Part shown: positions 930 to 52,419 of the stretch, piece after piece
How positions within the stretch are numbered: the first letter of the stretch is position 1
Layout of the letters: every line of letters starts with the position of its first letter
NCBI GenBank assembly: GCA_000320545.1
Contig: ADNK01000005.1
Span: forward strand, 8,613-72,612
DNA: 64,000 nucleotides
Source of the DNA: Bigelowiella natans CCMP2755
Lineage: Eukaryota > Protista > Cercozoa
Direction: 5' to 3'
Position numbers and translations under genes: made by a program
The notes under the pieces: model-generated
What the model was told of the DNA's origin: nothing
Databases searched by the model: none
Seen by the model: only the letters and a program-made list of their open reading frames with translations

Positions 930-1940
930 CAACGTACAAAAAAGTTCGTTCGCATTTGTGCATCTCAAGTCTAAACATGTACAGTTGTTGTGTAGTCAAG
1001 TGCTTTTGCACACATCGTTGTTGATCCTTTCAGAACATTTACAATGTCGGTCTCGATTTCATACGTTCTTCAAACAAATGTCAACACACACATGTCTGGC
1101 TAGACATGTTTGGTGCAAACGTAAAGCTAGAAAGATGCAATGTGGGGCAATCTGTACACATGGCGTTATAACTAGCTGCAGCATGTAACGCGTTATTTAT
1201 AGGCGAAACAATTATTTGAACATACGTACCTGACTACATTCATATCTAGATGTGACTGAGCTGACTGAATAGTTGTCTTCGTTCGATCATCTTGTATGCT
1301 AGCATGCATCGATCACTGCGCGCATTGTGAACAGTTTTGTCGGCACGTACGTGCTGGCTCGATCAGCCAGCCTGTCTGTGCGCTACATATTGCGAGAATG
1401 ACGCACTGCTAGCAAATTGAGACACGTACAGCTAGCTAGACAGCGCACAACGAATAAGCAAGTAGTTTTTCTGCTAACTAACTCCGTTGCACAGCGCTAA
1501 AGTATAGCTTTTAGAGATCGATGATAAGCATTCATATGCGAAGAATACTGTCTGAATCTTGGGGAGATTCATGTTCGTCCGCTGATCGACGAATGCTAGA
1601 ATGAAACAGCCAGCAGCTGCTGTTATATAGCGGTACTCTTCCCCTACAACATAAGCGCTGTAGCCGCTGCTTTGCATAGCTACATCAGGATGATCATTGA
1701 AAATTATAAAATATCTAATCGCTTCATTACATCCGTCTCACGTGAAGCGTGGCAACGCTGCGATCTAACGACGATTCACAATTTTAGAAATCAGAAATAT
1801 TGTGCATCGGCGCAGTACTGTCATCGTATATCCATGTACGTGCACAGAACCAGAAAAGCATGCAAGGCAATGTGTCAAAATACGTGTGTGTATGCGTCAT
1901 GTTCTAACAAAGAACAAAAAATATCGCTTATCATTCAATC
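930..1940. other. Convergent intergenic island 1, rich in palindromic tetramers (CTAG, CATG, TGCA, AGCT, GATC)
   Basis: Lies between two 3' ends. Dense gctagc/catg/tgca, no microsatellites, no credible spliced ORF. Confidence 0.7.
1653..1740 (+). repeat. Dispersed ~85-bp repeat, copy A (ends CATTACATCCGTCTCA)
   Basis: AAGCGCTGTAGCCGCTGCTTTGCATAGCTACATCAGGATGATCATTGAAA...AATCGCTTCATTACATCCGTCTCA aligns with the reverse complements at 19635 and 20069 and with copies at 48652-48997. Confidence 0.85.
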
Positions 1941-1942
1941 AT

Positions 1943-3475
1943 TCATCGGCTGCGATTTGCTTTTGAGAGCAAGAATTGGATAAAGGGTGATGAGTGAGAG
2001 AACACACCCATTCCATATGATCTGCCGGAATGATTCTGGTAATGCTCTCCTCTGTGGCCATGGTTTGTGTTATTATTGTTCGGACTACTTGTGGTCTTTA
2101 CTTCATCTATCTGTTGTAGTGATTCGTAGTGTCCTCTTTGAGATATCCAAGAGCAACATACAATAATACCAAGGAGAGAGAATGAGGTTAAAAGAATAAT
2201 ATTGATGAAAACAAAATTCATAAACTCCAGAGGTGAGCCCTAGAGATGATAACGTAAAGGTCAAACTAAACTCCTTATTCGAGTATAAATTAAATGTCCA
2301 TTTTTCCTTTGAAAGCTGTGGTGATTTGGGAGCACGTCATCAAACATTAATTCATTCCATCAACTTAAACACAACTGACCCATCCCCCACCGCCATGTGG
2401 AAGAGCGCGATACTGGGCCGCTTTTCATTGTACGGGGCAGCTCCGTCGGGAGATGAAATCTTCGTGTGTATGCGTGTAAAAGGAAGTAAACAATTTATGT
2501 ATAAATTTAAAAGCTGTCGATTCGCAATTGTCCTAAGACCACTACTTACTGTTGCTACTGTTGATCTACGACTACTACAACAACAACAACAACAACTACT
2601 ACTACTACTACAACTACTATTTCTTGTAGTATAATTGCTGCTCTATGTACCCTGATGGAGAAATCGAGTTTGCCAATATCAGGGTTCATGTACACGGTGA
2701 GGAAGAATATATTCACTATGTGGGGCACGAATAGGAGTGAAGGTAGCGGAAAGAGCGAAGAAGGGAAGAGGCAGGGAAGAGGCAGGGAGGAGGGAGGAGG
2801 AGGGAGGAGGAGGAGGAGGAGGAAGGAGAAGCAAATGTGAATAACCGATGGAGGAAGCATAAATGATGTAATAATAAAACGGACACTGCTGCTGCTGCTG
2901 CCTGTACCTTGGTAGTAGTGGGCCACATGCATATTATGCGTCGGTCCAACTGCACAGGAACCATCTCTACGAGACAGAGAGAGAAATGAAGAGAGGGGGG
3001 CGGGGGGGGAGGTAAACATAGCACGAATGAGTAATTCAGCACAAAGATTGACTAGATGAATGAAAACATGAAGGTAGGTACCGATATTCACTGATGTATT
3101 GCTCGTAAGTCGTAACCTATCCATGATGATCAGACACGACAACAAAACACAAGCTTGATATGGTAACGAATACGAAAAAGAAAGAAAGAAAGAAAGAAAG
3201 AAAGAGAAAGAGAGGAAGAAGATAGGTTAATTTAGCAGACTACATTTGAGACGTCGTACCTTGCCCAGATGCTTATCAAACCACTTACGATCCACTTGAG
3301 TCGCGAGGTAATTTCGCCATGCACGCCCGAGCTGACAAATGGAGGTGGGAGAGGCAAAGAGAAAGACGACGACAACGATGGATGATGCAGAAATCACATA
3401 GTAACTAACTTGGCATGTGTTTAACAGTACTATATATTCGCAGAGAGAAAGAGAGAGATAGAGAGAGAAAGAAAG

Positions 3476-3519
<44 letters not shown>

Positions 3520-5420
3520 GTGATAGCCTGAATGAAGCATTGATGATTTTTGTCGTTCGAAAGTATCCTCTATTGCGTTGGATCGGCATGTTTGTTGGTC
3601 ATACACATTGTGGATCTAGCTATGGTGGTGTTGTTTTATCTTACATGCTGTCGTTGCTCGGAAGAAGCCTCCCGGAAGCTGAGGCCCGTCTTGATATCCG
3701 AAGGAATGGACACCCCAGCTGTGCGTATGCTGGGAGAATAGAGGATGTAAATACTTGACGATGTTTCATGATGGTGACGGCTAGGAATGTGAAGAAATCA
3801 TGCACATCTTTTCAATACACGGTGTTCTTGGCAACATCATGGCTGCGTATTTGATGATACAAACATACATTCGTGGATCTCTGACGTCCAGTGAGTGGAA
3901 AACAGAGCCTGTAAAGAAGAATAAGAAGAATATCAAGGACATAGCAGGCAACGATGCCGACAGCAAGGAGGCACCTGTTTTGACCACAACCACAGAGATA
4001 GATAGGGGCGAGTGCTATCATCATTGATTACATTTTATGTTTAAATCTATACTCAATACCGACCGAAGAAGCAAGTTCCATCAGCATGGGACCCCACACG
4101 GCAGACGCGAGGCCTCAACGCTATTATTATCGAAAGGAGGCCAAACATCAAAGGATAGCAGAACATCGGGAGAACTAACACGACAACAAGAACAACACCT
4201 ACTACTACTACTACTACTACTACTGCTGCTGCTGCTACTGCTACTACTACCGCCAAGCTGGTCGAAGTCGCGAGAGCCCGTTACCACGTTCAATAGCACC
4301 TGAAAAGAGGGAGCAGCAGCGGCAGTAACAGAGACACAAAATAAAGGCGTAGATACATCATCAACGCACATGGTGGCTGCATGCTGTATGTACGAAGAAC
4401 GATAATGTGCGGAAAATAACATCCTTTTGATCGATGCAAAGGACAAGCAATCAGACTGCTGCTGCTGCTGCTGCTGCTGCAAAGCCGTCATGTATCATCA
4501 CTACCATTACAATTACTACTACTACTACAACAACTACTACAACTACTACTACTACTACTACTAATAATAATAATAATACACATAAAACAACGCAGAAGGA
4601 ACAGTAGCAACACCTGTACTTCGCCATCTGCAATACTCAGGAGCATTCTCTGAAGCCACTGAGGCATTGGAGCTGACGCACTCTGCTTTGTCGATGATGG
4701 CGACGACGATGAAGCAGCAGCAGCAGCAGTAGCATTGGTACAACCTTTACGTGACATGGCCATTAATGATAGTGATAATGATGAGGAAAATAGGAAGAAG
4801 AGAAACCTGAAATTGGGGAAGGAGCAGCAGTGCGAGCTGTCGTTGATACAACGTGGCCTGATAATCAACAATAATGGCAGCGACAACGACGGCACAACGA
4901 CGGTGAGATCCAGTATTGATACTGTATCACCGCTGCTGCTGTAGTGTGTTCATGGTACTACAACTACAATCGCTATTTTTGACGACAGAATAAATGATGA
5001 AAAATGATGATGATGATGATGATGATGATGATTGCAGTCTGATGCTGTTAGATACAAGGTCAGCCATCGTTTGTTGTCGTCGTCGTCGTCGTCGAGAAAT
5101 AAGCTAGTATTTTCTCCGTATGTGTAAAAAATACACACTCCCCCCCCCCCTTCTATTCCACCCCAACACATTTGGACCACCGTTGGCCGATGTACGCATT
5201 CGCTTAGCGCCTCTCTTCCCCGACCCCATGCTGGCCATTGTAGAGCTGGCAGATGGCGCAGCGTGGGATGATGATATAATGGGGGTAGCTCCAGCAGGAA
5301 TATCCTCTGTAACATTCATTTACTTAACGCTGCGAAGTCCAACATCCGTATCATAAACAACACAAACCCTCCCTTGCCAACACACGCACATGTGTGAATA
5401 CACACATAGACACTACTATT

Positions 5421-5460
<40 letters not shown>

Positions 5461-6245
5461 GCCGAATCGCACCGTCGGGGATATGAGCACGTGCACGCTT
5501 TGGCTGTGACTTGCGAATCTCGTTCTGCTCCAAATGGTACCTGAAAAAGGAGGAGGGGAGGGGGGGGTGAAGGAAGGAGGAAGGAGGAAGAAGAATATAG
5601 ATTAAGAGGGCTCTGCTATTTGTATGCACGTTTCTTTGTTTGATGTGTCCCCTCCCTCGTACGCAAGGATGATAGTAATGAAGAACACTGTGAAGGTTGG
5701 AGCATTGATAATAATCGAGCAGCAACGGACAACATATCAACGGAATAGTGGCATTGATGAGCTTGCTCTTGAGTGAATTGAATTATAAGTCCAGAACAAG
5801 CACGTCGATGATTTATTTAACCAAGACACGATTACAGCAGATTATTAGTTTTTCAACTGCTGTCTGTACAAGCTTCGTCGCGAGAGAGCAGACAATAAAT
5901 CATCGAATATTGTTGTGCCACCACCACCAGCAGCAGCAGCAGCAGCAGCATCATCAATGAAAACACGTTTCACGACCAATATTCCATGCAGCAGCCAGTG
6001 TGCAGATTTTGATACTCAACTTGGACCTGCGTTATGATAGCGGCGGATATCATTAGTAGTTTTGATTGGTGAAGAAAAGAAGAAGAAGAAGAAGAAGAAG
6101 AAGAAGAAGAAGAAGATGATGATGAAGATGGTGAGGTGTGCATGAAGTATAGGAGGAGGAAGATGATTGATTTATTGATTGATTGATGATTAGTGGCAGT
6201 GGTGTTGGTGGAGGGCGATAATGATTAAGATGATGGTGGGACTGA

Positions 6246-6318
<73 letters not shown>

Positions 6319-6955
6319 AAGACGTGATACGACATAATCTTCCCCCTTCTCCTCCTCCTTCTCCTTATCATCATCATCATCATCATCATCATCATAATCC
6401 CGTCGATGCAGGTGACTTAGTACATAGATGAATACCTCATTGGCATCTATCTTGGTCACTATTCCTACAATCCAACTCGATCTCCTAATAAACAAAAGAA
6501 TAGAATATCTATATGATGACGATGGTGATGATTGATGACGATTGATGATTATTGTGCCACAATGAAAATGATTATGGAAAAAATCACACACGAAACTGAG
6601 AGAAAAGAGGAGAAAAATGAAGATGCATTATGCATGTACACAGATAGTGACAATCAAAATAGCGGCGGCGACGACGACGTAGACGACGACTCACGTAGGT
6701 TTGGGCTTCCGTTGCTTTATCATGACGGGTTCTCCCTTGGCATATGGATACACTGTCCTTCGGTTTCTGCAAATAATGATGAAGGGCAAGGGCGTTGATG
6801 AGGAAGAATGAAACCAAACTAGCTTGTTGGGAATATATCAGAGCAATTTTGCGCTTTCTACTTGTACTTATTATCGTTTTCACAGTGACTCCATTATCAA
6901 CGAAATCGATTCTGCAAACATGAGTGTCCTCCACAAGAAGGTCATTGACTTTGAG

Positions 6956-6992
<37 letters not shown>

Positions 6993-7093
6993 TGATGATG
7001 ATGATTTATTACCCCTGCCATAACAGCAAGTCCACCCTTAGCTGATATGGCGGTTGATTGACAAAACAACAAAAGATTAGGAAAGAAACGGAT

Positions 7094-7133
<40 letters not shown>

Positions 7134-9403
7134 AACCAAACCTATGGTGCTAAACACTTGGTGTATGTATGTATGTATGTATGTATGTATGCACGTATGT
7201 TGGTATGTATGCCACTTGATGAATATTATCATCCATGCTTTTCCGAAGATTATACCGCAAAATACATGCTTGCACCAGAGATTGAGCTGGTCGCCACCGT
7301 CGTTAAAATCACCACCACCACCATCATGATAACCATCATCTAATGTATCCTTCTTGTTCTTCTTCTGGTTATCTACCTGCAGCTCCTTCACTGTTTCCAG
7401 AATCGTGGATGCATGTGCAGGGTTTTCGGGGGTCACTACGTTGTAACATTGACAACAAGAACAACACTTATGAGCTCATCATCATCATCATCATCATCAC
7501 AATCATAATCAACAACCATTCATTCATAAAATGAGAGATCGATGCTACTATATAAGAAGTAAAGTAAAAGGCTTTTGTCCATCGAGCAGTGAATAATACA
7601 GTCGTGATAGTTGAATTATCATTATTATTACTATTATCATCATCATCATTATCAATATTATTATAATCCGTTTGGTCCCCCTCCCCACCTTCAACTCCTC
7701 CAAATGGCTTGATACAGATGATCTCGTATCCTGCCTGATAATTTCAGCGATAAGATTGCAAACCAACGGTATGGTGAAGGAGGAAAGAAGTAGCAGCAGC
7801 ACCAGTGGAGAGTAGCAGAGAAAGAATTAATGGACGAATGGAGTGATGGATGGATGGATGGATGATGAGAAAGCCTCGACGAATACCTCGATGCCTTGGA
7901 TATCCGCCTGGGAACCAGGCGTCACTGACATGATTCGTGTCGGTATTATTTTCCTCCTCGCCTTCGATGATGATGATGATGATGATGATGGTGGTGGTGG
8001 GGGAGAAGTAGTAGCAGCAGAAGATGAAGCCTCTGTGGATGCCACTGCTGCCGCAGCTGTAGATGCAAACATACTGGGACATGACGACGATAGTATTCTC
8101 CTATCCTTTGTGATCTTCCTCTTCTTTTCATCCTGCTGCTGCTGGTTCATAGCTGCTCTCGGTGATGATTCATGGCCAGCTCCTTGCTGCCTCCCCCCAC
8201 GTGCTCCAGCTGCTGATAACGACCCGCCGTCCTCACGATCGGTGTCCTTATTCTCACGCTGCAGGGCTATTCCGAGCGGTAACGACGCGTCCAAATTCAC
8301 GATCACCCTCTGTGTATGTATGGCGGTGGTGGTGCTGTTAGCGATTCAGTGACAACGATGACGACGACGACGACGATGACATGGACATTTCATTGAAATG
8401 GGGGGCGTGGGGGGGCGTGGAGAGGAGGGCAAAAACTCAATAAAGCAATGGTCATTGTGATGGGTGTAGGAGGATAAGGTTGAAAAAGGAGATAATTAGC
8501 TTAAAGAACCAACAGCAACATCGCCAGCAGCATGAATATAAGGAGATTAAATATACGAAAGATAGCACTTTGCTGAATCGGGACTTAGGCGCGAATCGGT
8601 CCTATAAAGTGTAATAAAACGATGAAATCACATCCTGCTACTGTTGGCCATTGGAGGAGGGCGTTGGGTATTACTAAAACAACAACAACAACTACTACTA
8701 CTACTGCTACTACAACAATCTCAAAAGTCACGGGAGGAGTACAAATCACCGCTAGTACCTGCTCAGTTTTCCAATTTATGATTTCGTCGTAGCTTCTGCT
8801 CCAACCCACGTAATGCACGTCCACAAAATCATTTGTCGACGACGACGATGACGAATCGCTCATCTTTCGGATAAAAAAGAGGAAAGGGAACCGGGGGGAG
8901 GGGGAGGGGGGGGGGGGGGGGTTAAAATAAAATATTTTGAAGTAGTTCACCAGGACGTCTCAAACCACACAATGAAATAGGAGAAATACCATCGATTTGG
9001 ATATCGAGGATGATCTCGCGACGACCTGGTTGTAAGGGTAGTAGGATGGATCAAACATTATTGTACATCAATATACACTACTCTGAGATTTCTTCATACA
9101 GTTGACATTATAATAATACCTTACAATTGCGAACGATTGCCAAAATCCATTTACCAAATAAATCTCTCACGTCCATCAAACCGGAAGGCTTTTGCATCAT
9201 CGACTTGCTTATCGCCTCCCCCTCCTCACTAAACACCCCGAAATCGTCAATGGGGGGGGGAGGGGGCGCAGAAGGGACTAGACAATGTTTAGAATCGCCA
9301 TCGATTCCCTAATCGATTGAGCCACAAACAAAGGGAAGGAGATATGAATGTGATGATAGCGATAGAAGGGTTCCAATTCAAACTTTCCTTTCATCGATAG
9401 TGG

Positions 9404-9456
<53 letters not shown>

Positions 9457-12400
9457 CCACACGCATGCACACACATGCACACACATGCACACACATGCAC
9501 ACAGAGCGTTGGACATCGATCTCTCCCTGCTCCAATAATGCCCCTGCACACGCGCCTTACCACTACTACTACTGCTACACTACGGCTACCTCGTGACTAT
9601 GCTGAAGTGGGCCATCACACGGCAACAAACGAGCGCCAACTGCCCGATATCGCTTGTTGTTCTTACGACGTGCAATGAGTGGGGACCCTGGAGGAAGCTC
9701 ATCCTCCTCCTCCTCCTCCTCCTCCTCCTCTTCCTCCTGCTGCTGCTGATATTCATCGTTTCCCAAGCCAGCTCCTGCTGCCTGGGGAGAGGTACTACTA
9801 CTCCACAGTGGCTGCTGCTTTTTGTACAAATCATCTTCAGCACCGTTGCCCTTCTTCTGTGCAGTATGCACAGCGTGGAGCTTCAGCTTCGCCGCCATTC
9901 CTTCCTCTTCCTCCTCCTCCTCCTCCTCCCTCCTTCTCCTCCTCATTTGACGCTTGCGTGACGACAGTGGGGATTTTTGCCGTGTGGGATTCCTATTCCC
10001 TCCTCTTATGCTTCCAATCCTGTCCTCAATAGCTCCTTGCTGCTGCTGCTGTCTCTTCTTTCTTCTTTGCAAATCCAGTGACGGAGAGCCTGCAGGTAGG
10101 GATTTCTCCCATGGGAAGGTCCTCTTGCCTTCAATCTCGTCGTGTTGTTGTTGTTGCTGCTGCTGCTTCTCCTTCCCCATCACAGTGATAGTATCGCCGT
10201 GGTTCTGGGTGTTATCCCCTTCATTTTTCCGCCTCGTAGTAAGATCCTTACTAGGCACACCAGCGAAAATTCGAGACCACAATGGTCCGGCTAATAATGT
10301 ACACATTTTAACAACACATATTATATACATTGTTATTTTCATCATCCTCCCCCCCCTCCTCCGCTTCCGCGGCATTCTCTGCTTCGCCCTTTGCCACATA
10401 AACTAGTCTCATAATTGATGACAACACCACAAAAACATCCAATTGCAGAAGAAGGAGCCTCGACGGAATTACACCATATCTTTATTTATCAATCGGAGCA
10501 TTCTCTAGTTCATCTATCCATCAAGGTATGGATACTGTGACTTGCCACTACTTCTGTTATTATTATTATTATTCCTCTTCTTTTGATACAACCTGTGGAG
10601 CCTTTGAAAATGGAGGTGTAGCATGAGGCAAGAGGCTGCCCAGTCCCGTAGTGCAACTAGGTAGGAACATCAGTCGTGACGTTCGAGCAAGGGGGGGGTG
10701 CAGTTAGATTGTTTTCCAAATTATGAGAAGGAAAGGAAAGCGATAAGAGAGCGAATGATGGATTCACTATAAAGGACAAAGGAGGACAACAACCCATACT
10801 CATACCCGCTGAATCTCTAGGAATTTTCGTTTATCACAGGGCTGAGGCTTGACCAAACATCGTGCCCTTATATTGAAGGGGGGGAGGGGGGGATGTAGAA
10901 AGAGGGTGTATTGACATCAGCCCTTGCTAACATGCAAAATTAAGTCTCGTTGTCATCATCATATTAATCGAAAAACAAGTTTTCACTGGTTGTTAGGCTA
11001 GTAGGACAATGCTGTTACCCGAAAAAGCTGCTGAAAGAGCCAGTTGGGCTGGAGGAGGAGAGGGGGGAGAGAGGAGCTTGAGGAGTGAACCCCAAGCTAG
11101 TGCTAGATCGACTCTCCCTCCTCCTCGTCATTCCCAAGCAGCCTTCATCTTTAGCATTATAACCATCGTCATTGCCTGCTTCCTTGATGTCCTCGCCCAC
11201 CATATTGTTGTTTGTTTCTGAGAAATTCGAAGAGAAGGAGGAGGAGAACGTATCGTTGCGACGATGCTGCAGCTGAGTATACTCACGTCCATGCTCCTCG
11301 TTGCCCACCCCCCACCAGTTTCCACCGTCCGTCGTCGCAGCTTCTAAGGGTGCCTAAGAAGGGAGGGTAAGGAATAACACTTCGCGAAAAGGGTTGTTTT
11401 AACAAAATCAAGCAGTTTTTACCCCCAATGCGAAGTGAGAGCCAGCATGGCCGACAAGTATAAGGTGTGAGGAGGCGGGAACGTTAGCGATTAACTTCTG
11501 CAGCAATGCTGCACTGCGTATCAGGGTCTCCGAGTGCTGCATATTATCAGGTATACTTAAGTGCTGTGACAGACATCTAACCCCCTCTTCCTTTCCCTCG
11601 CTCTAATTCACAACCGATTCGTTCTTCGAGAGGGGGGAGGCGAAACCGTGGTAACGAGGGTCGACAGGGATGCCGAAAGCGGAGCTCTCTGTTAGGGTCA
11701 AGAATTTCATTTGCGCTGCCTAACAACATCAAAACATGTGGGTGATGATGTGACGGCCAGCGAGAACAAAGGCTACATGAAGGATGCAGGACCTCCATTT
11801 CCAAGCAATCGAATTAATATACGTAAAACAAGAGTACTCTCAACTTAGTCAAAAGCAACTATTACCTTTGGGGGAGGGTAGAAGCCCGTACACTCAAACA
11901 GATGATTCTCAACTCGCACCTAGGTAGATTGGTTATACAACGACGCCAAAAGATGAGATAATTATAGAGCAATACAGCATGCGTGTGGAGTATTGCCAGG
12001 ACTCGATCTCTTTTTTGCTACCTTCGCGAACCGTCCCACCGCCTTCGCAATCTGGAAAAAATGACGGGGGGGGAATGGCACGTATTCGTTTTTTGGTCGG
12101 CTAGCAAGAATCCACATAAATGATGATGGTACAACCTCTGCCGCTGTTTGCAGGCAGCCCAGTGCCGGTGATGACACGATCACGCACCTGCACCGAATTC
12201 GTTATTCCGATAAGAGTACGATGATTAGTTGCGGCTTTCCTCATGTGATTAGACCATAATGGAATTCTGTTTTCGAAGACAAGGATAGCATATGCAGGGA
12301 CTCTACCCTTCTTTCCTCAGCATCGGAAAATTTCTCACAAGAGCCTCAGCATTTTCACGCGCAAAATGCAATCCTTTCCGATCTAATGGGGGATCCTGTG

Positions 12401-13130
12401 AGGATAAATAGATTATCGTCAACAACATCGTCATCCACGTTTTGGAATTTGAACTGCTGCTGCATAAAGAAGGTTAGGACCAAAAGGTCTACAATTACCA
12501 GTGCGTGATGCTCCATTGTTCGTGCTGGTACAAAAGGGGGCATGCTCTCCGTGGGCTCGTATCTATAGTATAATGCCGAAAGAGAATATGAGGAAACGTG
12601 GGAAGGAGACACTGTGCAACCTCCAAATATGCCAAAATGGATGCATTTTCATTATCCGAAACGACTTATTACAAACATCAATATCTTCCTTCCTTATCTC
12701 TAATATGTCTGTGCTCTAGTGGCCCCCCCCTCGTCCTTACATCCAAGCCCGATTCGGCCCTTTCTTAAAAGCTCTATGAATCTGTTGAGAAGCGAAATTC
12801 AAGTTATTATGACTGTAGTGATACACTTGAGCTGAGATTTTCCTTCTTGGTGATGAATTTTTTTAACTCTCATTTTGTCATATAAGGATAAGACCCAGTC
12901 GTGACTCCCAAACTGGACTTGAGTTGAGTGGCGCATCACAACAAGCAGCCGCCCCTGAAAAAGGGAGGATTAGTCTCCTGGATCTACTCTATTCTCGAAG
13001 ATTTTCCATAGACATTCTTCACTGATCAATCCCGAAACGGTATGGAATGCAGAAATAGCAACACAGCCCGTTGGGTGAAGAGGATTACCTGACCGTTCAC
13101 CTTCCCCTCATCCGTCGACTCCGCCTCCAT
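1943..13130 (-). CDS. Large multidomain protein: UBASH3/Sts-like histidine phosphatase (degenerate) - Tudor/chromo-barrel - PDZ - Tudor/Agenet-like - OTU-like cysteine protease; about 30 exons; may start further upstream (up to ~13600)
   Basis: Spliced exons read LLVVMRHSTQ...DWIHRAF...MPPFVPAR...DPPLDRKG...VSSPALGCLQTA...VRVENHLFE...LILVGHAGS (12955-11420); MDVRDLFGKWILAIV...VDVHYVGWSRSYDEII...DRFAPKS (9180-8570); LDASLPLGIAL...IMSVTPGSQADIQGIEAGYEII (8310-7700); KGEPVMIK...WIVGIVTKIDANEVQVEY (6760-6000); RVGSHADGTCFFGSVFHSL...YEQYI...VNIFFL...SIALFHMAVGDGGHYESL (4130-2100). Most junctions are in phase; those around 4850-5900, 6770-7300 and 10290-10590 are unresolved, so two genes cannot be excluded. 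Confidence 0.7.
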
Positions 13131-13880
13131 ATTTCGGATCGGGTCCAGACTTTTGGATACTGCAATACACATTTTAATCCATTTTTTTAGGTTATTCTTT
13201 CGATAAAATATGCTACTACGCTATGAGTATGCCGTGTCCATGCCTTGAGCAGAATGCGATACAGCAGCTGCACCTTTGAGGCAAAGAATTTCCCTTTGAA
13301 TATCCTATTTTCTCCTCTCGGAAGTGGCTTCCTCTTCTCTTAAACGATACTTCTATGGCGACAATCAGCACATCATGTCACAATCCTGAAATGCATCGTA
13401 TTTTTATCTACTTCGTAAGTCGACCGCTTTGGTTACCAACCCAGCGACAAGAAGTTCGGAGAAAGTATTGGAAATTCTAACTGGGATGACGGGATAATGC
13501 CATGAAAGGATAAAATCGCCTAAAAAAAGCTACATGCGTCAACAACTTGCTCGAACTCGGGTTGCCATACTCTTTCGGTAGCCCTCCCCTTCCCATTCAG
13601 AAATTGCTTTCTTGTATGATCCATGTATCACTTCGCCTATGCCTGATTTTGGGGTTTATGTGTATCTTGAAGTTGCGGAATTTCATAGAATATTAAAGGC
13701 AAATTCAATTTCATAGCATAAAAAAATTCTATTTCGTAGTAATCTCTCGAGCGGAATTCGATCACCGTTTTGCAATAAGAGACTGCCCAAATTTGACTTG
13801 GATTCGTTCCTTTCCAGGGCTGTCCAAAGTATTTTCCGCAACTGGTGTTTTGAGGGGGTTTCAAAATAGCTAAGCAAAGG
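13131..13880. promoter_or_regulatory. Putative bidirectional promoter region (may include upstream exons of the minus-strand gene)
   Basis: Head-to-head spacer without microsatellites. Confidence 0.45.
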
Positions 13881-24118: not shown

Positions 24119-26800
24119 CAGCACACCACTAATTGTTTTCTCTTCTAGTTGGTTCAAGGGCGCGTTATTGTTCGCATGATATCAACAACACGATGCTCCT
24201 CCGCTTCTAATCTGCCCCCCTCCCCCCCCCCTTTTAAGTTACCAAGAGGGGTGGAGTGAACAGGTGAATAGCGTTCGTGGGCGTCGTAGTAAACCACCTG
24301 TGGAGCAGAAGAGGCAAGGGAAGAGAGGAGGAGGAGTATGGGAGGTTATTGAGAAAAGCCAAGGAAGAAATGAAGTAGGTCTCTTTCCCTTATTCTTGCT
24401 GTTACTAGCCTCCTCCCGTCATCGTCGTCATGTGCAATCCACTAAATCTCTTCTCTTATCATTACTATCACTATCATCATCCTCATCCTCATTATCCTTA
24501 ACATCATCGAAATGTTATCACCTTGGCCTTTTTAGGTCCTCCCTCCGTAGTATTGCTCATGGTCTTCGTACCATTGTTGGTCTTGATCTTCGTACCGTTG
24601 TTGGTCTTGATCTGCTCCGATTTAGTGACACCAACCTCTTCTCCTTCTTTCTTGGGCGTCGTCTGCTGCTCCTTCTTCCCCTCGAGCGACGTGCTCGATG
24701 GCGAAGAAGAAGAAGAAGAAGAAGAAGAAGAAGAGTTCTTCTTGTCCTCTTCCTTATTTGGGTACAGCATGGTTGTGGCCGTTGGCGGCTCTTCATACGT
24801 GCAAGGTGCTCCTCCTGGGCCCTCCGCTGCTCTCCTATGGCAGACTCTCATATACACGCCCTCGCAACCATACATTGGATTTACACATGACCGAATTTGA
24901 TGTCCCTGACCGCATTCAACGCTACATGGACCCCATACACCCCATCCACTCGCAGGCACTGCTCTCCCCCCCACCACAGCAGCAGCAACAGTAGCATCAG
25001 GTATTGGGAAGGACCTGAGTTAATAAAACGAAGTGAGCCTTTTCTTTAGTCATGAAATCATCATTGGTCTCTCCTCCGCGGCAGGAGTGACAAGATTAAA
25101 CGGTTTAAGATGAGCAGTAGTAGTTCCCTCTCTCTTCTTCCCCCCTCCTAGTATTACTCTTCATCATCACTTACTACCCCGTGCTGAGAGTACTGTTGGC
25201 TGTCGTGTTCAGTTTCTCCTCCTGCTGCTGATGGTGGTGATGGCTAGAGGAAGCTGCATCACCAGCAGTAATAGGAGGTTTCGATAATGGAGTGCTGCCA
25301 TTGACGTACTCCTTCAGTCTAAGAATCAACAGTAGTACACCGACACCCCAACAAACACCCTTATCACGAATAATTCGTAGCAGCATTTCACACATTCACA
25401 CACTTATGCACTACGTGCATGCGTTTGACTCTGCAGGAACAGCAGCTGTAGCAGCAGCAATGGTAGCATTTGGTAGTGTTGAATATATCAATGTCTACAG
25501 TTTTGATGTCCTGATTGGCTATTCAGCGGATAATTGTTATTTGCCGTTGATATTATAAAAACAGAAAGATATCAACAAAGACAGTAACGACTATCAACAC
25601 ACAAGCAGAGACAATCGTCGATATTGTTATTGTACTGTTCATGAATTAAAAAATGATGTGGAAATAGGTATATTGTACCCTTGAGCCGTACTGCGGAGAT
25701 CGTCGAAATCCCTGTCCTCTGTTCCTGATGAAGATGGTAACCATATTGTGAATCGATATCGACGACGACGAGCGAGTACGTTCACCATGGGGGGGGGGGG
25801 GGGGGAGTGAGGTGGAAAAGATATTAATTATAGAGGCCATGTCGACGAGAGCTAATTCATCTAAGATTTACAAAATGTTTGTAATTCTTGGTTGAACAGC
25901 TTACACTGACCTGAGGCTTTTGCAATGGCCGCAGCGCTTTCCCCAATGTCTAAATTAATTCCAATTCCACGAACTCTCATTAAACATGAATCCACAAATA
26001 TATGATCATCTCTACCACCTTCCTCCTTTCAAAGTATTAACTGCTGTAAATATGTACCTTCGAGTGCTCTGTCTGCTTTTCTCAGCGCCTTATTTCCATG
26101 ATCAGTGGCCTGCGGGATGCTTAAAGGACCCTCAATCTTTGGACCCATATCCTCCTCCGTTGGATCATCGCCTTTTACTGGCGTAACTTTCTTGTCCGAT
26201 TTCTTCTCTTTCTTATCTCCTGGTTTTTCAACATCTTTCTTACTAGCATTCGTGGATGCCTCATCGTTTTTGCTTCCGCCATTTTTCTTCGCTCCAGTAT
26301 CTTCCTTCTTGTTCGCCGCCTCCATGTCGCGGTGAGAGTGATGGGAGGAGGGCTTCGGAGAGGCCGATAGCAAAGTTCCATTCTTACTGTACGGGGGAGT
26401 CTCCGCGTTACCTGCTGCTCCATCTGTCTGATTGTCAGCATGGAGGTTGGTCGCACCGTCTCCATCTTCGAGCTGTACATCGCTTGCCTGGAGCCCAAAA
26501 GCCTTTGCAACCGCAAGGGAATATTTCTAAAGAGAAAAAATGTTAATCTTTGTATTATCGTCTGTTATTTGTATCTTCCATTTGTATTGTTATCTTCTGT
26601 CCCTTTCGCCAAACCCTGATTCTGGTCAAATAAACTAGGCAACAAACCTTGGTCAAAGATGGATCGAACATAGAATCAATTGTGCGGCTTAGTTCTTGTC
26701 TTGCTTCACGGTGCTCAAGCTTTCCGTTTACCCTCATTCCTCTGGCTACGAGAGAGCCCGAAAGAAGGAAGTAGCATGCGACTGCTACCAATTTTTGCAT
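20565..26800 (-). CDS. Secreted, low-complexity protein with one thrombospondin type-1 (TSP1) repeat, multi-exon
   Basis: N-terminal signal-like MQKLVAVACYFLLSGSLVARG. TSP1 motif WGVWGPCSVECGQGHQIRSCVNPMYGCEGVYMRVC (~24945-24840). In-phase exons at ~24300, ~24000, ~23845 and 23667-23230; last exon DDLETANDIF...KAV*. Several middle junctions are uncertain. Confidence 0.62.
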
Positions 26801-30821: not shown

Positions 30822-33800
30822 ATGCGGATCAAAGAGCTCATCGTTGATGGCTTCAAATCCTATGCCAATCGTGTTTGCATCAGTGGATGGGATTCTCAAT
30901 TCAATGCAATTACTGGTTTGAATGGAAGCGGAAAGAGTAACATTCTGGACTCAATTTGTTTTGTGCTTGGCATCAGTCAACTCAAACAGGTTCTTTGCTC
31001 GCTTCCTCAAACCTCACTAACCATCTAGCACGCAATTAAACAACGTCCTACCGTTTAATCTTAGGTTAGAGCGAATAATCTACAAGAACTAGTTTACAAG
31101 CAGGGACAATCAAGAGTGACCAAGGCCACTGTCACTATTATTTTTGACAACACTGACAAGAAGAGTACGATTGCATTTTTTTTATTTGGTGTCATTGACA
31201 TGCCATGCTCACCTTGGTTACTTTAAAACCATCCATATTATTCAAACGATTCATAAATTAGAATTTTTCTAATAACATAGTTCCTAGCCGCATGTATGAA
31301 TTTTATCAGATGTGAGTTTGGAATGCCTAAAGAAAGTTTTCAATAACTCATCTCCTACAGATAGTCCACTCGGTTACGAGACTTTCGATGAAATCACCGT
31401 CTCGCGCCAGGTCGTTATTGGAGGCCGAAATAAATATATGATTAACGGGCATACAGCTCAGCAAAACAGAGTTAAGAACCTCTTCCATTCTGTCCAGCTG
31501 AATGTGAACAACCCGCATTTTCTCATCATGCAAGGAAGAATAACAAAAGTTATTAACATGAAGCCTCCTGAAATTTTGTCGATGATTGAAGAAGCTGCCG
31601 GTACTAGGATGTATGAGAGCGGTAAACAATCTGCTATGAAAACGATCTCAAAAAAACAGGCGAAGGTGGAGGAGATCAATAAGATTTTGACCGAGGATAT
31701 AACCCCATCGCTGGAAAAATTGAGAAAAGAGCGTTCATCATATATGCAGTGGACAGCGAACAAGCAGGAAATTGAGAGGCTGGATCGATTGGTTATCGCG
31801 GCGAAGTATTTGGACAGTCAGGAAACAAGTAACAAGTCCAAGGATGACGTTCAAGAGCTCCAAAACGAGCATGAGGCACTTTTGGATGAAAATAAGAATG
31901 CGGAAGCCAAGAAAGTGGACATATCAAAGAGAGTATCTGCTCTTTTGAAAAATAAGGAGGACCAGATGGAGGGTAGCTTCAAAATTATCGAAAAAAGAGC
32001 TACTGCTCTTTCGAAGGAACTCGTCAAGCATACTAGTGTATGGGAGCACAAAAAACAAGAGATCAAATCCGAGCAAAAACTTCTGAAAGAATCCAAGGTT
32101 GCGGCAAAGAAGCATGAGAAACTTATTGTGGACAAAGAAAATGAGATCAAGAAATTTGCTGAGGCCAAAATGGATACCGAGACTAAAGAGAGGGAGACAA
32201 GGGAAAAGGTTGCATCTCTACAAGGCCAACAGATTGGTATTACCATGTCGGATAGCAAGGAAGACCAGGGATCTTTGACAAATCAGCTCATGGATAAACA
32301 ACGAGTCGCATCCGAACTCGAGGCTGCAATGACAGGTTACAAACAGAAGATGAAGCACCTTGAAGGCGAGCTGAAGGAAAAAGAGAAACTTTCCAGCTCT
32401 GAAGCGAAGCAATGTAAGAAACTGAAGTCTAGCTTGGAAGCGACGACTGCGAAGCATTTAAAATTGAGTAAAAAGTTGGACCAAGTTCGCATTAATCCGG
32501 AGAGAATGCGCGAGCTCTCCAAAAGCATCCGAATTTGTGAGACGACATACAACAAGAAGACTGAAAGTTATGAGGCGTTGGCAGCAGAGATGGCTAGGTA
32601 TGATTTTAAGTATGACATTCAGAGTAAAAGCTTCGACCATAACCGTGTGAAGGGTCTGGTTGCTAAGCTTATCAAGATCAAGGACCCCAAAACTTTGACA
32701 GCAATCGAAGTTACAGCAGGCGGGAAGCTTTTCCAAGTAGTTGTTGATTCTGAAAGTACCGGCAAAACTCTTCTAGAAAAAGGAAGACTTCGCAGGAGGG
32801 TGACAATTATTCCTCTTAATAAAATTGCAGCCCGTGCAATTGATACCAAAATTGTCAAAGAGGCGCAGAAATTAGTGGGGAAGGAAAATGCAGACCTTGC
32901 TCTTTCGCTTGTTGGATACGACGATGAAGTTGAGCGCGCTATGGTCCATGTATTTGGCCGCACATTCATCTGCAGGGACTCCTTGACAGCCAAGAAAGTC
33001 ACATTTAACCCAAATATTCGCACAAAATCTGTAACCCTCGATGGTGATGTCTACGATCCGCGTGGAACTCTAACTGGAGGAAGCTCTCTCCGAAAAACTT
33101 CTATTTTGTCCGAATTCCAAAAGTTAAGTCAACTGCAAAAAGAAGTTGGGGATCTTGAAAGACAGTTGAAAGGGATGAACGAGGAAATGCAAAAGTTGAA
33201 AAAGAATGCAGAGAAGGCAAAAGAATACAAAATGCAGGTTGATCTCGCATTGCATGAAGTGAAGCTCAACGAGACAAAGCTCAACGAGAGCTCCTACATG
33301 AAATTTAAGGCAGAAGCTGACAAATTATCGGAAGAATTAAGTACATGCAAATCGGAGATGAAGAAACAAAAAGCAGAACTTGCTGCGGTGAGTTCTTTTT
33401 CTATGTAACATTGATATCCTAACTGTACTAATAATGCATGATTTTAACAAGGTACGGAAACGTTGCTCTGAAATTGAGGCGAGCATCAAAGACTATGAGA
33501 AGGAGAAAAAGAAACAACAAAAGCGTGTTGAGAAAGAATTGAAGGCGTCAAAAAAGTCTCTCGAAGCGTTGAACAAAGAGCTCAAACGAAATCAACAGAA
33601 ATATGATCAAGCATGCATGGAACTCCAATCTCTGAAGGAAGAACACCAAAATAATATCGAACAGTGTAAGAAAATCGAAAAAGGCATTGAGACACTAGAG
33701 AAAGAGGTTGGTTGATATCTTCACCGCAGACTTTTATCCTGCCATTACATTGGTGATTGTTTCTTGTTTTTGTATGTAGGAACTCGTGTTGAGCGACATG

Positions 33801-35391
33801 GTGAAGAAAGCCAGTGAAGCCTACATGGAAAAGAACGGAGAGTTAGAGGCAAAAAGGGCAGGTATTAGTACTCCAATTTTAGGCGAGTTTAAATTTTATT
33901 CGGCTGAAATTTTAAAAAAGGTATTGCGGCATGTGACAATGAGATTCAAGATCTTGTGAAGCAGAAGAATGGCATTGAAAAGGACATTTCTAGCCGTGAG
34001 CTCCAAGCAAAGAAGCTTACTCATAAAATTTCAAGGATGGTATCGGATACCGCTGAAGCCAAGAAAACAGTGGAAAGGATGAAAAAGAAGCATCCTTGGA
34101 TTGCTCAGGTACCGACCATATAGCCCTCAATTTTCTAGCGAGCCATTTGGCTGATGATGCTTCGATATTGATACATAGGAATGTCATCTTTTCGGAAAGC
34201 CACACACAGACTATGATTTTAAGCGTAATAATCCGAGAACTGCAAAGTCCAGGCTTGAGAAGCTGAAGAAAAAGCAGGATGATATTTCGAAAAAATTGAA
34301 CACCAAGGTTGTAAAGCAAGGTCATGACAAGAATATTGTAAGTACTAATTGATATCCCATTCGATAAGGTAATGGGTATGTTTGAGCGGGCGGAGCAAGA
34401 ATACCAAGACCTTCTAAAAAAAAGAGATCAGGTCACGCGGGATAAGCAGAAGATACATCAGGTCATTTTTCTTGGCAGTGTTGTTGATTACATCACAGGA
34501 ACGGGATTAAAAGTGTATTTACGGATTGCGAACATGTTGAAATTTTAGACGATAGAAGAGCTCGATAGGAAAAAGAATGAAGCCCTCGAAACCACGTGGC
34601 AAAAGGTCAACAAAGATTTTGGGTCCATATTCTCTGCGTGTCTGCCTGGTACAAGCGCAAAGCTTTCTCCGCAAGAGGGAAAATCCGTCCTCGAGGTCGT
34701 GATAGCGTGTTTCGGAAGATGTCTGAATAACAGTATGCCTGTCATGCGCATCTCTCATTCGATGGCATTTTCAGGGTCTTGAAGTAAAGGTGGCATTCAA
34801 TGGAGTTTGGAAACAAAGTTTGACAGAACTCTCCGGTGGACAGAGATCTCTTCTCGCACTTTCGTTGATTCTAGCTCTTTTGAGGTGCAGTGATGAGGAT
34901 TGTATTTTATGTCGTATTGAAAGAATTGGTGCTCATCACAAGTTGTTGCATGTGTTCATTAATGGTGACTTGGATCCGACAGATAATGTCTTGCTTCTCA
35001 CTTAATATTTAAACTAATTCCAGGTTCAAGCCAGCCCCGATGTATATTTTGGATGAAGTTGATGCTGCCCTTGACTTGTCCCACACGCAAAATATCGGCC
35101 AGATGTTGAAGAAACATTTCCCACAGGTCCGTTTATTGTTTCTGTGCAATACTGTACATGTTTCTGATAGGGTGGATATGTTGTTTGCAGTCCCAGTTCA
35201 TTGTGGTTTCTCTGAAAGAGGGAATGTTCAACAACGCCAACGTCATCTTTAGAACCAAATTTATCGATGGGGTTTCGACTGTAAAAAAGGTTAAAGGGAC
35301 AAGAAATAAAAACACGGTTGACAAAGAGAACCGCCCAGTTCGTAGGGGTGTTCGTCAAGTCGGCAAATCAAAAAGGACTCAGCTGCGATAA
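30822..35391 (+). CDS. SMC2: Structural maintenance of chromosomes protein 2 (condensin ATPase subunit)
   Basis: [15 protein letters not shown]...[25 protein letters not shown] (Walker A); [15 protein letters not shown] (Q-loop); hinge [10 protein letters not shown]...[18 protein letters not shown]; [35 protein letters not shown]; [17 protein letters not shown]. Mostly short introns and one ~2-kb exon. Confidence 0.96.
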
Positions 35392-49354: not shown

Positions 49355-51266
49355 TTATTTTTCTTCAACAACAGCGCCTAAAACGGTGTTAAGCATTTTG
49401 CGAAGGAGTCGAAACTGTATCGGCTTCCCTAGAATATAATTGAAACCGGGGTTATTTTCCCTCATATCCTCAGGAGACCCTGTGAGCGCGACAACAATGA
49501 TCTTCTTCGTGGTCTTGATCTTGCGAATCTCCTTCAGCGCTTCTATACCGTCCATCACAGGCATTTGAATATCCGTGAATACGATCGGTTGCAGGTGCTG
49601 CTTCAGCACCGTATCTACGCTGCGGACGAGAGCTTGGCCGTTCCCTGACATAATGCATTGGCCTATGCCAGCTCTTTTCAAGAAGCGCTTGATTAGCTTC
49701 TGGGAGAGGTAGTCATCTTCCGCAAAGCAGAGCCGCACGGAAGGTGGGACCAACCCTGATCGGTCGCCCGGGCGAATATCAGGAGACGGATGAAAACTTC
49801 TCGTCGATATACACGGTGATTTCGCTCCTGTTTCAACTTTCATATCTCCGTAAGGAACAACTATTGCGAAGATAGATCCTTTCTTTTCCTTGGATTCAAC
49901 GTATATGCAGCCTTTCATCAATTGGACTATCCCCTTCACTATCGCTAGTCCAAGGCCAGTGCCACCGCTGCGGCCTTCCAGAGGTGTAAAGATCTTAGCA
50001 ATATCAAGCTTGGAGTCTGATCCCTGGTCCTCTACCTCGATGAGAATGGCGTTGTGCTTCATCCCAGGCTTTCCCGACTCAATCTTGCACCGGCCATTGA
50101 CGATGATCGCATCGTTTTCCCTGGAAGAACAGAAAAAGAACAAAGAAGAGGAGAAGGGTGGGAGGGGAGGAAGATGATGAGGATGCGTCACAACACCCCA
50201 ATTAGAACATCGCTAATATCTACTCGGAAAGGAGGGAGAATTGGATTGCATGGTGTCGAGGCATAGCATGTTGCTATTTCATTTTGTCAAGTGTCTCCTC
50301 GCTTATTGCTGACTCAGGAGTGCTTGTATGCGTTGTGTGCTGCATGGCACATAACACGAAGAAATGCTGTGATTGGGGGTTGTTCTTCTTAATTGTATGT
50401 GAAAAGTGCAAAAATTCATTGGTCATATCAGTTCGCTATCAACGTTTTGAACGATCAATTTTAGCGGCTGATTTGGTGGATGTAGAAGTAGAAGTAGAAG
50501 TAGTAGTAGTGGTGGTGATGGTAATGGTAGAAATAGTGTACATGGTCTCCTCGACGTAATCCAGGTTATACTTCGCGGCGAGTTTACTGAGAATTTCTTT
50601 GTCGTGTGCCCGCTTCTGTTGTGCTCTCACTTTTTCGCGGAATTGGGGCGGGGGCAACATGATCTCTTTGTCAGAAGAAAGACGCCGCGTACGAATCCAG
50701 ATTTTCCCGCCTTCCTTCGATGCTTCCATTGCATTCAAAATCTAAGTAAGAGAGGGAATCAAGTCATTTTTGTTGTCGTAGTTGTGAAAATAAATGCAAC
50801 AAGTCTGAGGGAAATGATCAAGGAGAAACGGGGAGGAGAAGGGTACTGCTGTATTTTCAGTTGTGAATAGATGTCTATTTATTAGTACCAAGCTGTTTAT
50901 CATCTGCTCAAGCTTATGTGAGTCCGCAACTATGATCTCGGGAATGGAGTTATCATGACAAATCTTCAGCACCAAAGACTTTTTGTGCGCTATGCTTTCA
51001 TTCAGCTTTTCGATATCTCGAAGCATTCTCAACATATTGCTTTTGGTCAAGTCCAGGTTCCACTTGCCAGAGCTTTTGAAAGAACAGGGAAAGGGTTTCG
51101 ATATAGTCATAACGATGACGATAACGATGATAATGAATGTAAAGATAGTATTTTTCGTCAACTGTTTTCATAATGAGGACATTATTTTGGAGAGGAGATA
51201 GGCACAAGCAGATAGCATTACATAAACTCCATCTCATCATGAATTATAATGCGCGCGAGATTGTGA

Positions 51267-51304
<38 letters not shown>

Positions 51305-52419
51305 AGCAGCTTTGTGAAGTTCAGCACTGAATCCACAACGGCCGCAAGTGATCTTGATCCTAAGAAGATCCCTTCTATGCACGCTGCTTCGCTTTCTGTG
51401 CTTTGCATAATATTTTTCTCCTTTAAGAGCTGGGTGTAGCCCAAGATTGCATTAAGTGGTGTCCTAAGTTCATGAGTCATTTTCGCCAGAAAATCCATCT
51501 TGTCTTCCGAGGCCTTGAGCGTGGCTGCAACCTGTTTGACGAGTTCCCGCTCGTTTTCTTGTAGCTCATCAATAAGCTTTCCGAAATCTGAAGTTTTCCT
51601 TCGCAGATGTAGTTGTAGTCGGCAGACTCGAGCTAGCACGCTGAGAGCAGTCATCTGTTGGTTCGTTAGCGTCATCTTCGTATCCGAAATCACACATAAA
51701 GTCCCAAAGGCCATGTTATCTTCTACCATAGGCATACCAGCGTAGAACCGAATCTTTGGACCCCCGGTAACCAATGGATTTTCAGCGAAGCGTTCGTCCT
51801 CCCACGTATCGTTGACGACGAAGAGCTTGTTGGGCTGTAGAATCGCGTGGGAGCAAAACGCCTCATTCCTACCGGTCTCTGAGCAATTTAAACCTTTTTG
51901 GGCTTTGAAAAATTGGCGTTTCTCATCTATCAGGCTGATCGCGCCTTTCTCTGTGCCGCATATCAGAGTAGCGAGCCACAAAATAGAGTCATAAATCGGT
52001 TCCTGTTCCGTGTCTAGAATATTGAATGAGCGCAAAAGTTCCATTCGCTCAGCTTCGTGTTGCGGCTTCATGGCCGGTCGATATCTTTTTCGTGATAGAT
52101 CCGGGCTATTCAGTGTGGATCTCATATTGTTGGTGGCCAGCTGAGGCGTCGTTAATTTGAGATCAGCAGTTTCATTTCCTCGCATTGCAATCTCCATAAT
52201 GTCATTGGCTTCTGTCACGGCATCGCTTCTATCCAAAAGAGACACAAACTCTTCATTTTCATGTATCAGTTTCCCCACGGATTCTGTGCTCATAGATTTT
52301 AACTCATTTAGAGTTTCTACACAGAGCTTTATGTCCGCTTCAGACCATTCCAAGTCCGAGATGGACTCCTCCATCGCGGAGGTGGGGGCAGGTCGAAAGA
52401 TGCCTACACCACGGATCAT
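49355..52419 (-). CDS. Hybrid histidine kinase: GAF - HisKA - HATPase_c - receiver
   Basis: GAF EAERMELLRSFNILDT...AFCSHAILQ...DERFAENPLVTGGPKIRFYAGMP...GTLCV; H-box THELRTPLNAILG; N-box KLEQMINSL/ILNAMEA; EDQG; G2 GGTGLGLAIV; receiver AEDD...TDIQMPVMDG...ALTG...KP. Confidence 0.92.

What the first reader, a model, noticed from the sequence alone, without database searches (positions are those of the whole stretch)
1943..13130. Unusual architecture: Sts-like phosphatase + Tudor + PDZ + Tudor + OTU deubiquitinase
Seen: five recognisable domain signatures co-linear on one strand, with in-phase splice junctions across most of the interval. Established: UBASH3/Sts proteins join this phosphatase to UBA/SH3 domains, Tudor/chromo-barrels read methyl-Lys/Arg, and OTU domains cleave ubiquitin. 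Inference: one scaffold coupling phospho-, methyl- and ubiquitin signalling. I know of no described protein with this combination, and it is invisible in the ORF track.
Basis: partly seen in the sequence, partly recalled or inferred. Interest (0 to 1): 0.8.

Follow-up and report, generated by a model that had tools for sequence, protein, structure and literature searches.

The report
Phosphatase-to-OTU multidomain gene, Bigelowiella

Summary
The window is Bigelowiella natans nuclear DNA.

**One gene.** A full-length transcript-derived relative from another marine protist (P0004, 1050 aa, MMETSP) matches the minus strand in order from 12957 to 1946. I read 25 consecutive exons from the ATG at 13130 down to 5480, and 11 more from 4688 to the stop at 1943-1945. 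All junctions are AG/GT, in phase and free of stops. Only 5479-4689 is unresolved.

**Domains.**
- The phosphatase domain is solid. The relative hits Sts-2 and UBASH3A structures at E 4e-9 and 4e-6 and passes the Pfam His_Phos_1 threshold. Part of its phosphate-binding arginine set is missing.
- The OTU call is well supported but below the Pfam threshold. Its Cys and His loops are intact.
- The two barrels have only weak, mutually consistent hits.
- The PDZ call rests on language-model neighbours and by-eye motifs.

**Existing annotation.** The public JGI model (P0001, 989 aa) covers only the first part and is mis-spliced.

**Verdict.** This is a previously undescribed arrangement of known domain types, seen in two species. 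Its function is untested. I built and searched no joined B. natans protein.

The parts
1943..13130 (-). Whole coding span of one multi-exon gene, from ATG 13130 to stop 1945-1943. At least 1265 codons in 36 read exons, plus an unresolved linker.
   Evidence: reading; relative matches in order; splice borders, phases, no stops.
11423..12954 (-). Sts/UBASH3-type histidine phosphatase domain in nine exons: 12954-12895, 12781-12741, 12562-12499, 12395-12307, 12187-12136, 12051-12022, 11919-11866, 11719-11615, 11536-11423.
   Evidence: exon-by-exon matches to P0004 residues 28-225; that part of the relative hits Sts-2 (E 3.9e-9), UBASH3A (E 3.6e-6) and Pfam His_Phos_1 (29.8 bits; cut-off 21.7).
12895..12954 (-). 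Exon carrying the nucleophile histidine. The motif reads R-H-S here and T-H-S in the relative, where the family has R-H-G.
12136..12187 (-). Exon with the S-P-A-L..Q-T-A motif shared with Sts-2/UBASH3A. The conserved pocket arginine is replaced by Gly here and by Ser in the relative. The JGI model skips this exon.
11423..11536 (-). Exon with the second catalytic histidine (G-H-A-G).
9590..11353 (-). Low-complexity, charged linker exons (11353-11019, 10866-10806, 10656-10593, 10290-9590) with poly-Q/E runs and basic clusters.
   Evidence: (exon present in JGI model P0001).
8759..9308 (-). First barrel, chromo-barrel-like, in exons 9308-9120, 9025-8990 and 8863-8759. A short conserved exon follows at 8601-8569.
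   Evidence: Weak hits on the relative's domain: ARID4A chromo barrel E 0.3, Pfam MSL3_chromo-like E 0.006.
7377..8309 (-). PDZ-like domain in exons 8309-7887, 7734-7689 and 7435-7377, with a low-complexity insertion of about 100 residues in an early loop. Its last strand lies at the start of exon 6822-6695.
   Evidence: nearest named Atlas clusters are all PDZ (0.92, 146 shared features). No Pfam hit.
5480..6822 (-). Second barrel, Tudor-like, in exons 6822-6695, 6484-6436, 6026-5977 and 5540-5480. The lower end of the last exon is not fixed.
   Evidence: weak hits to SGF29_Tudor (E 0.037), Myosin_N SH3-like, MBT and Agenet.
4689..5479 (-). Unresolved linker, rich in simple repeats. No exon chain established.
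4251..4688 (-). Two conserved exons ahead of the last domain (core 4688-4620, whose upper end is not fixed, and 4299-4251).
1943..4120 (-). OTU-like cysteine protease domain and tail in nine exons: 4120-4064, 3908-3869, 3729-3645, 3331-3260, 3116-3082, 2966-2908, 2715-2651, 2459-2380, 2135-1943.
   Evidence: OTU support.
4064..4120 (-). Exon with the Cys loop (D-G-T-C), holding the presumed catalytic Asp and Cys.
1943..2135 (-). Last exon, with the His loop (G-H-Y-E-S), a 21-residue insertion relative to P0004, a conserved tail, and the stop at 1945-1943.

Best explanation
Window 13130 to 1943 (minus strand) is a single intron-rich Bigelowiella natans gene encoding a protein of roughly 1300 residues or more. 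In order it carries: an N-terminal Sts/UBASH3-type histidine phosphatase domain; a long disordered charged linker; a chromo-barrel-like domain; a PDZ-like domain with a large loop insertion; a second Tudor-like barrel; another linker; and a C-terminal OTU-like cysteine protease domain. Shown: the gene structure, its conservation as one transcript in a second protist, and the identity of the phosphatase domain. Inferred: the protein acts mainly as a targeted deubiquitinase. The OTU-like domain keeps its Asp/Cys and His loops in all three available sequences. The barrels and the PDZ-like domain would serve as targeting modules, perhaps for methylated or C-terminal peptide ligands. The phosphatase domain keeps both histidines but lacks the conserved pocket arginine in both species and one further arginine in each. 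It is therefore more likely a weak or altered-specificity phosphatase, or a phosphate-binding module, than a robust enzyme.
For: Organism and public model. Transcript-derived relatives P0003 and P0004, one ORF on a 3.4 kb cDNA-like contig. Exon-by-exon matches in order. Thirty-six exons with AG/GT borders, in phase, no stops. Unique counterpart in the genome. Phosphatase: Sts-2 E 3.9e-9 and UBASH3A E 3.6e-6 over the full domain, and His_Phos_1 at 29.8 bits against a 21.7 cut-off. OTU: 29 of 30 nearest named Atlas clusters carry PF02338 (0.94, 191 shared features). The stand-alone relative P0005 aligns to the whole OTU profile at E 0.0066. Nearly all of the listed Foldseek PDB matches are OTU domains, whereas an equally poor model of another region gave a random list. 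hhalign matched the Cys loop at P 2.9e-4. Barrels. PDZ.
Against: No B. natans transcript was examined, and 5479-4689 is unresolved, so a split gene in this species is not strictly excluded. OTU, PDZ and both barrels are below Pfam thresholds. Both AlphaFold models are poor, with pLDDT 40 and 33. The Foldseek OTU matches have TM about 0.2. The profile of the last domain finds no solved structure by sequence. It also finds none of the canonical OTU genes of the same genome. The replaced arginines cast doubt on phosphatase activity. No activity of any kind is shown.
Confidence: 0.75

Rival explanations
1. In B. natans the interval holds two or more genes, for example phosphatase-barrel-PDZ (as in JGI model 66059) and a separate OTU-like gene. 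The single transcript would then exist only in the other species.
For: The JGI ab initio model ends at about 6440. 5479-4689 has no resolved exon chain. A stand-alone OTU-like paralogue exists in both species.
Against: The JGI end results from a wrong frame. The relative supports the other frame, with in-phase junctions continuing to 5480. Conserved exons continue in order to the shared tail and stop. The other species has a full-length single ORF.
Confidence: 0.08
2. The gene is real, but the C-terminal domain is not an OTU protease. It would be another papain-like or unrelated fold that happens to share short Cys and His motifs.
For: Pfam OTU is below threshold (17.4 against 23.3 bits) and absent for P0004. 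hhalign covers only the Cys loop. The model is low confidence.
Against: Three different methods agree on OTU. The Pfam alignment spans positions 2-128 of 128. The order of helices then strands fits.
Confidence: 0.12
3. The protein is chiefly a non-catalytic scaffold. The phosphatase domain is a dead enzyme, and the barrels and PDZ-like domain merely mediate assembly.
For: The conserved pocket arginine after S-P-A-L is Gly or Ser in both species. The R of R-H-G is Thr in the relative, and the arginine four residues after it is Gln in B. natans. UBASH3A itself is described as having only mild activity (PMC10855836 abstract).
Against: Both histidines and the OTU Cys, His and Asp positions are kept across species and paralogues. 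That argues for selection on catalysis, at least in the OTU domain.
Confidence: 0.3

Closest known systems
UBASH3A/UBASH3B (Sts-2/Sts-1), animal ubiquitin-associated and SH3 domain proteins
   Same: The phosphatase domain of the relative aligns over its full length to Sts-2 and UBASH3A structures, and only to them among solved histidine phosphatases at E up to 10. Both proteins pair this domain with a ubiquitin-system module.
   Different: Pfam detected no UBA or SH3 domain. The phosphatase is N-terminal rather than C-terminal. The ubiquitin module is a protease-like OTU domain rather than a binding domain. Pocket arginines are replaced.
OTU deubiquitinases with a Tudor domain (OTUD4, Drosophila Otu); from my own knowledge, not tested here
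   Same: An OTU domain combined with a Tudor-type barrel in one protein.
   Different: In those proteins the OTU is N-terminal, and there is no phosphatase or PDZ domain. No sequence relationship beyond the domain class was shown here.
Chromo-barrel and Tudor readers (MSL3, ARID4A, SGF29)
   Same: These are the best, though weak, matches of the two barrels.
   Different: All scores are below the thresholds, and ligand-binding residues were not examined.
JGI Bigna1 model 66059 (P0001; EukProt EP00466 P000113)
   Same: Same locus and strand. It shares most exons from 13089 to 7377.
   Different: It starts at an upstream in-frame ATG (13172), skips the exon at 12187-12136, uses wrong frames at 6766-6695 and 6484-6440, and lacks the whole OTU-like part.

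Membership tests
Histidine phosphatase superfamily, branch 1 (Pfam PF00300) | Profile match above the curated threshold | tested here: met
   The relative's domain scores 29.8 bits against a 21.7 cut-off. B. natans exons are too short to score alone, but they match the relative exon by exon at 40-70% identity.
Histidine phosphatase superfamily, branch 1 (Pfam PF00300) | Two catalytic histidines | tested here: met
   R-H-S at 12954-12895 and G-H-A-G at 11536-11423. Both align to the Sts-2 histidines through the relative.
Histidine phosphatase superfamily, branch 1 (Pfam PF00300) | Two highly conserved pocket arginines (PMC12398026) | tested here: not met
   The arginine after S-P-A-L is Gly in B. 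natans and Ser in the relative. The R of R-H-G is kept in B. natans but is Thr in the relative.
UBASH3/Sts family proper | UBA and SH3 domains N-terminal to the phosphatase domain | tested here: not met
   No UBA or SH3 hit in P0001 or P0004 at E up to 10. Only the phosphatase domain is Sts-like.
OTU cysteine proteases (Pfam PF02338) | Profile match above the curated threshold | tested here: not met
   P0005 scores 17.4 bits against a 23.3 cut-off, E 0.0066, though it covers the full profile. There is no hit for P0004 or its pieces.
OTU cysteine proteases (Pfam PF02338) | Cys loop (D-G-x-C) and C-terminal His loop | tested here: met
   Both loops are present in B. natans, P0004 and P0005. The Cys loop matches genuine OTU genes of the same genome at P 2.9e-4.
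OTU cysteine proteases (Pfam PF02338) | OTU fold | tested here: inconclusive
   Nearly all listed Foldseek matches are OTU domains, but the model has pLDDT 40 and TM is about 0.2. Atlas features point to OTU.
OTU cysteine proteases (Pfam PF02338) | Cleavage of ubiquitin or ubiquitin-like conjugates | not testable with these tools
   Needs an enzyme assay.
PDZ domains | Profile match, or the fold | tested here: inconclusive
   No Pfam hit and the model is unusable. Atlas neighbours are all PDZ (0.92, only 146 shared features). By eye there is a hydrophobic-Gly-hydrophobic loop and a P-G-S-x-A strand.
Tudor / chromo-barrel (Royal family) | Profile match, or the fold | tested here: inconclusive
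   Barrel 1: MSL3_chromo-like E 0.006 and ARID4A chromo barrel E 0.3. Barrel 2: SGF29_Tudor E 0.037, MBT E 0.1, Agenet E 0.14. All are below their cut-offs.

The most novel reading that the evidence does not exclude
A bifunctional eraser in chlorarachniophyte algae: one polypeptide that both removes ubiquitin and removes (or senses) phosphate on targets selected by methyl-mark-reading barrels, for example on chromatin. It would also mean that the Sts-type phosphatase domain became linked to the ubiquitin system twice independently: to a UBA domain in animals and to an OTU domain here.
Probability: 0.2. Interest if true: 0.65.

Novelty: new variant of a known kind. Interest (0 to 1): 0.45.

Why it matters
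Every module belongs to a known class, so this is not a new kind of system. Still, the arrangement appears in no paper I could find. It is conserved as one transcript in a second protist, so it is not an annotation accident. It gives a second, independent association between the Sts-type phosphatase domain and ubiquitin machinery, which bears on why UBASH3 proteins combine the two. It defines a small divergent OTU-like family with a fused and a stand-alone member in each of two species. It also shows concretely that the public B. natans model at this locus is wrong, and that exon-poor scans miss such genes entirely.

Tried and rejected
**Pfam and PDB scans of raw exons.**
- Pfam scans of ten hand-picked open segments, and of all 254 open segments of at least 30 aa on both strands of 1500-13600, gave only chance-level hits.
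- Six-frame genome scans with OTU and His_Phos_1 found nothing in the window.
- Two phosphatase exon pieces found nothing in the PDB.
- These blanks reflect exon size, not absence of the domains.

**Other analyses that gave little.**
- A crude codon-usage score did not separate the exons.
- The search with P0003 over its full length returned only itself.
- Contig look-ups for P0001 and P0004 returned nothing.
- The profile of the last domain hit no PDB sequence.
- A PDZ scan of the genome gave only three short exon hits, too few to build a comparison profile.
- The AlphaFold model of the middle region was unusable, and its Foldseek list was random.
- MAFFT misplaced short exon rows, so alignments A5 and A7 were discarded.
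- My first guess for the exon holding the His loop (start near 2240) was wrong. The relative places the acceptor at 2137-2136.

**Steps not run.**
Coordinates were then derived by counting in the printed views and checked.
B. natans evidence is exon by exon and by reference. Whole-protein analyses used the public sequences P0001, P0003, P0004 and P0005.

**Earlier notes.** The three earlier scan notes returned concern 35.7-37.4 kb and have no bearing on this gene.
Full report
**What the window is.** The window has long clean exons elsewhere (an SMC hinge protein and a hybrid histidine kinase). The interval 1943-13130 shows only short open segments and many simple repeats. A search of the 112-aa open segment 11018-11353 against protein representatives returned a 989-aa protein at 98% identity. 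The collection names it jgi|Bigna1|66059, an fgenesh model of Bigelowiella natans. The window is contig C3732 of a 91.4 Mb assembly.

**First negative results, and why they misled.**
- Pfam scans of ten hand-picked segments, and of all 254 open segments of both strands, gave only chance-level hits.
- Six-frame genome scans with the OTU and His_Phos_1 profiles found nothing in the window.
- Two exon pieces found nothing among solved structures.
- Reading the three frames showed why. The coding exons are mostly 10 to 40 codons long, with canonical splice borders, which is too short for any profile.

**One gene.**
- A search with the JGI model found a 983-aa protein, P0003, from a JGI sample. It lies on a 3419-base contig with untranslated ends, so the contig looks like cDNA.
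- P0003 matches the JGI model in order through the phosphatase, linker, first barrel and PDZ-like parts.
- Its 90% cluster also holds P0004, a 1050-aa MMETSP transcript product with a start methionine.
- P0003 ends early because its contig retains a short intron of about 50 bases that carries a stop. The reading frame resumes after it, and P0004 is the spliced form.
- tblastn of P0004 on the window gives about 30 matches in order on the minus strand, from 12957 to 1946. Nothing comparable occurs elsewhere in the 64 kb.
- In the whole genome P0004 matches only this locus and a paralogue of the last domain.

**Exon chain.**
- Guided by these matches I read the exon borders and checked them by script, without building a joined product.
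- Twenty-five consecutive exons run from the ATG at 13130 to 5480 (997 codons).
- Eleven more run from 4688 to the TGA at 1945-1943 (268 codons).
- All have AG and GT borders, consistent phases including every split codon, and no in-frame stop.
- Introns are 69 to 554 bases long.
- The stretch 5479-4689 remains unresolved.
- The JGI model starts at an upstream in-frame ATG, skips the exon at 12187-12136, takes wrong frames near its end and stops at about 6440.

**Phosphatase.**
- P0003 matches Sts-2 (3d4i, E 3.9e-9) and UBASH3A (5wdi, E 3.6e-6) over the whole domain. No other histidine phosphatase structure appears at E up to 10.
- The domain alone scores 29.8 bits on Pfam His_Phos_1, against a cut-off of 21.7.
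- The B. natans exons match it at 40-70% identity.
- Both histidines are present.
- Of the conserved arginines described for UBASH3B (PMC12398026), the one after the S-P-A-L motif is Gly in B. natans and Ser in the relative.
- The first arginine is kept in B. natans but is Thr in the relative. A further arginine four residues later is Gln in B. natans.
- Which structural residue each of these corresponds to rests on my own knowledge of the family.
- Full activity is therefore doubtful.
- No UBA or SH3 domain is present, so only the domain is Sts-like, not the protein.

**OTU-like domain.**
- Pfam does not report it in P0004.
- Atlas features for residues 835-1025 place 29 of 30 nearest named clusters in OTU-bearing clusters (0.94, 191 shared features).
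- A search with the cDNA piece found P0005, a 214-aa MMETSP protein that is 48% identical over the whole domain and tail.
- P0005 aligns to positions 2-128 of the 128-position OTU profile at E 0.0066, below the threshold.
- Its AlphaFold model is poor (pLDDT 40). Even so, nearly all listed Foldseek PDB matches are OTU domains (best OTUD1, E 4.6e-3).
- An equally poor model of the middle region gave a random list, which serves as an informal control.
- hhalign against genuine OTU genes of the same genome matched only the Cys loop (P 2.9e-4).
- The Asp/Cys loop and the His loop are intact in all three sequences.
- I put the OTU reading at about 85%.

**Barrels and PDZ.**
- The first barrel gives MSL3_chromo-like E 0.006 and ARID4A chromo barrel E 0.3.
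- The second gives SGF29_Tudor, Myosin_N SH3-like, MBT and Agenet at E 0.04 to 0.14.
- These hits are weak, but all fall in one fold class.
- The PDZ-like part has no profile hit. Its Atlas neighbours are all PDZ clusters, with a low shared-feature count.
- In B. natans the PDZ-like part carries a low-complexity insertion of about 100 residues in an early loop.

**Paralogue.** The profile of the last domain finds a second B. natans gene on contig C1129. Its start and end match P0005. Each species therefore has a stand-alone form of about 214 aa and a fused form.

**Comparison and novelty.**
- The closest known relatives are UBASH3 proteins for the phosphatase domain.
- From my own knowledge, OTUD4 and fly Otu are the closest for an OTU-plus-Tudor pairing.
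- Literature searches found no description of this combination.
- It is a new arrangement of known domain types, present in unannotated public sequences.

**Mechanism.** The mechanism I favour is a deubiquitinase targeted by reader and PDZ-like modules, with an Sts-type domain of weak or altered activity. This is inference. No activity was tested.

Noticed in passing
G000 contig C1129:116183-118120 (loci L010, L012, L013): A stand-alone paralogue of the OTU-like domain in B. natans. Its first and last exons match the 214-aa MMETSP protein P0005, so both species have a fused and a free copy.
   Followed up: partly
L009:3062-3109: The JGI cDNA-like contig of the relative retains a short in-frame intron that carries a stop, truncating the called protein P0003. 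The MMETSP form P0004 is spliced. This could be incomplete or alternative splicing that removes the His loop.
   Followed up: partly
window 6440-13172, minus strand: Public model jgi|Bigna1|66059 is mis-spliced. It skips the exon at 12187-12136, reads through the likely donor at 7376, uses wrong frames at 6766-6695 and 6484-6440, and ends before the OTU-like part.
   Followed up: yes
window 11200-11290, minus strand: The JGI model removes a small in-frame intron with a GTGAGT donor inside the 335-base linker exon. The stretch is open either way, so it could be an optional intron.
   Followed up: no
window 31312-34545, plus strand: An SMC-family gene, with a 698-aa exon holding the hinge domain (SMC_hinge E 1e-21) followed by several short exons.
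   Followed up: partly
window 49358-52419, minus strand: A hybrid histidine kinase. GAF and HisKA lie in one exon, and HATPase_c plus a response-regulator receiver in another.
   Followed up: partly
window 24507-25019, minus strand: An open segment with a thrombospondin type 1 repeat (TSP_1, 23.4 bits, just over the cut-off).
   Followed up: no
window 52856-54313, plus strand: A 486-aa serine-rich ORF with no Pfam match. It scored as coding by codon usage.
   Followed up: no
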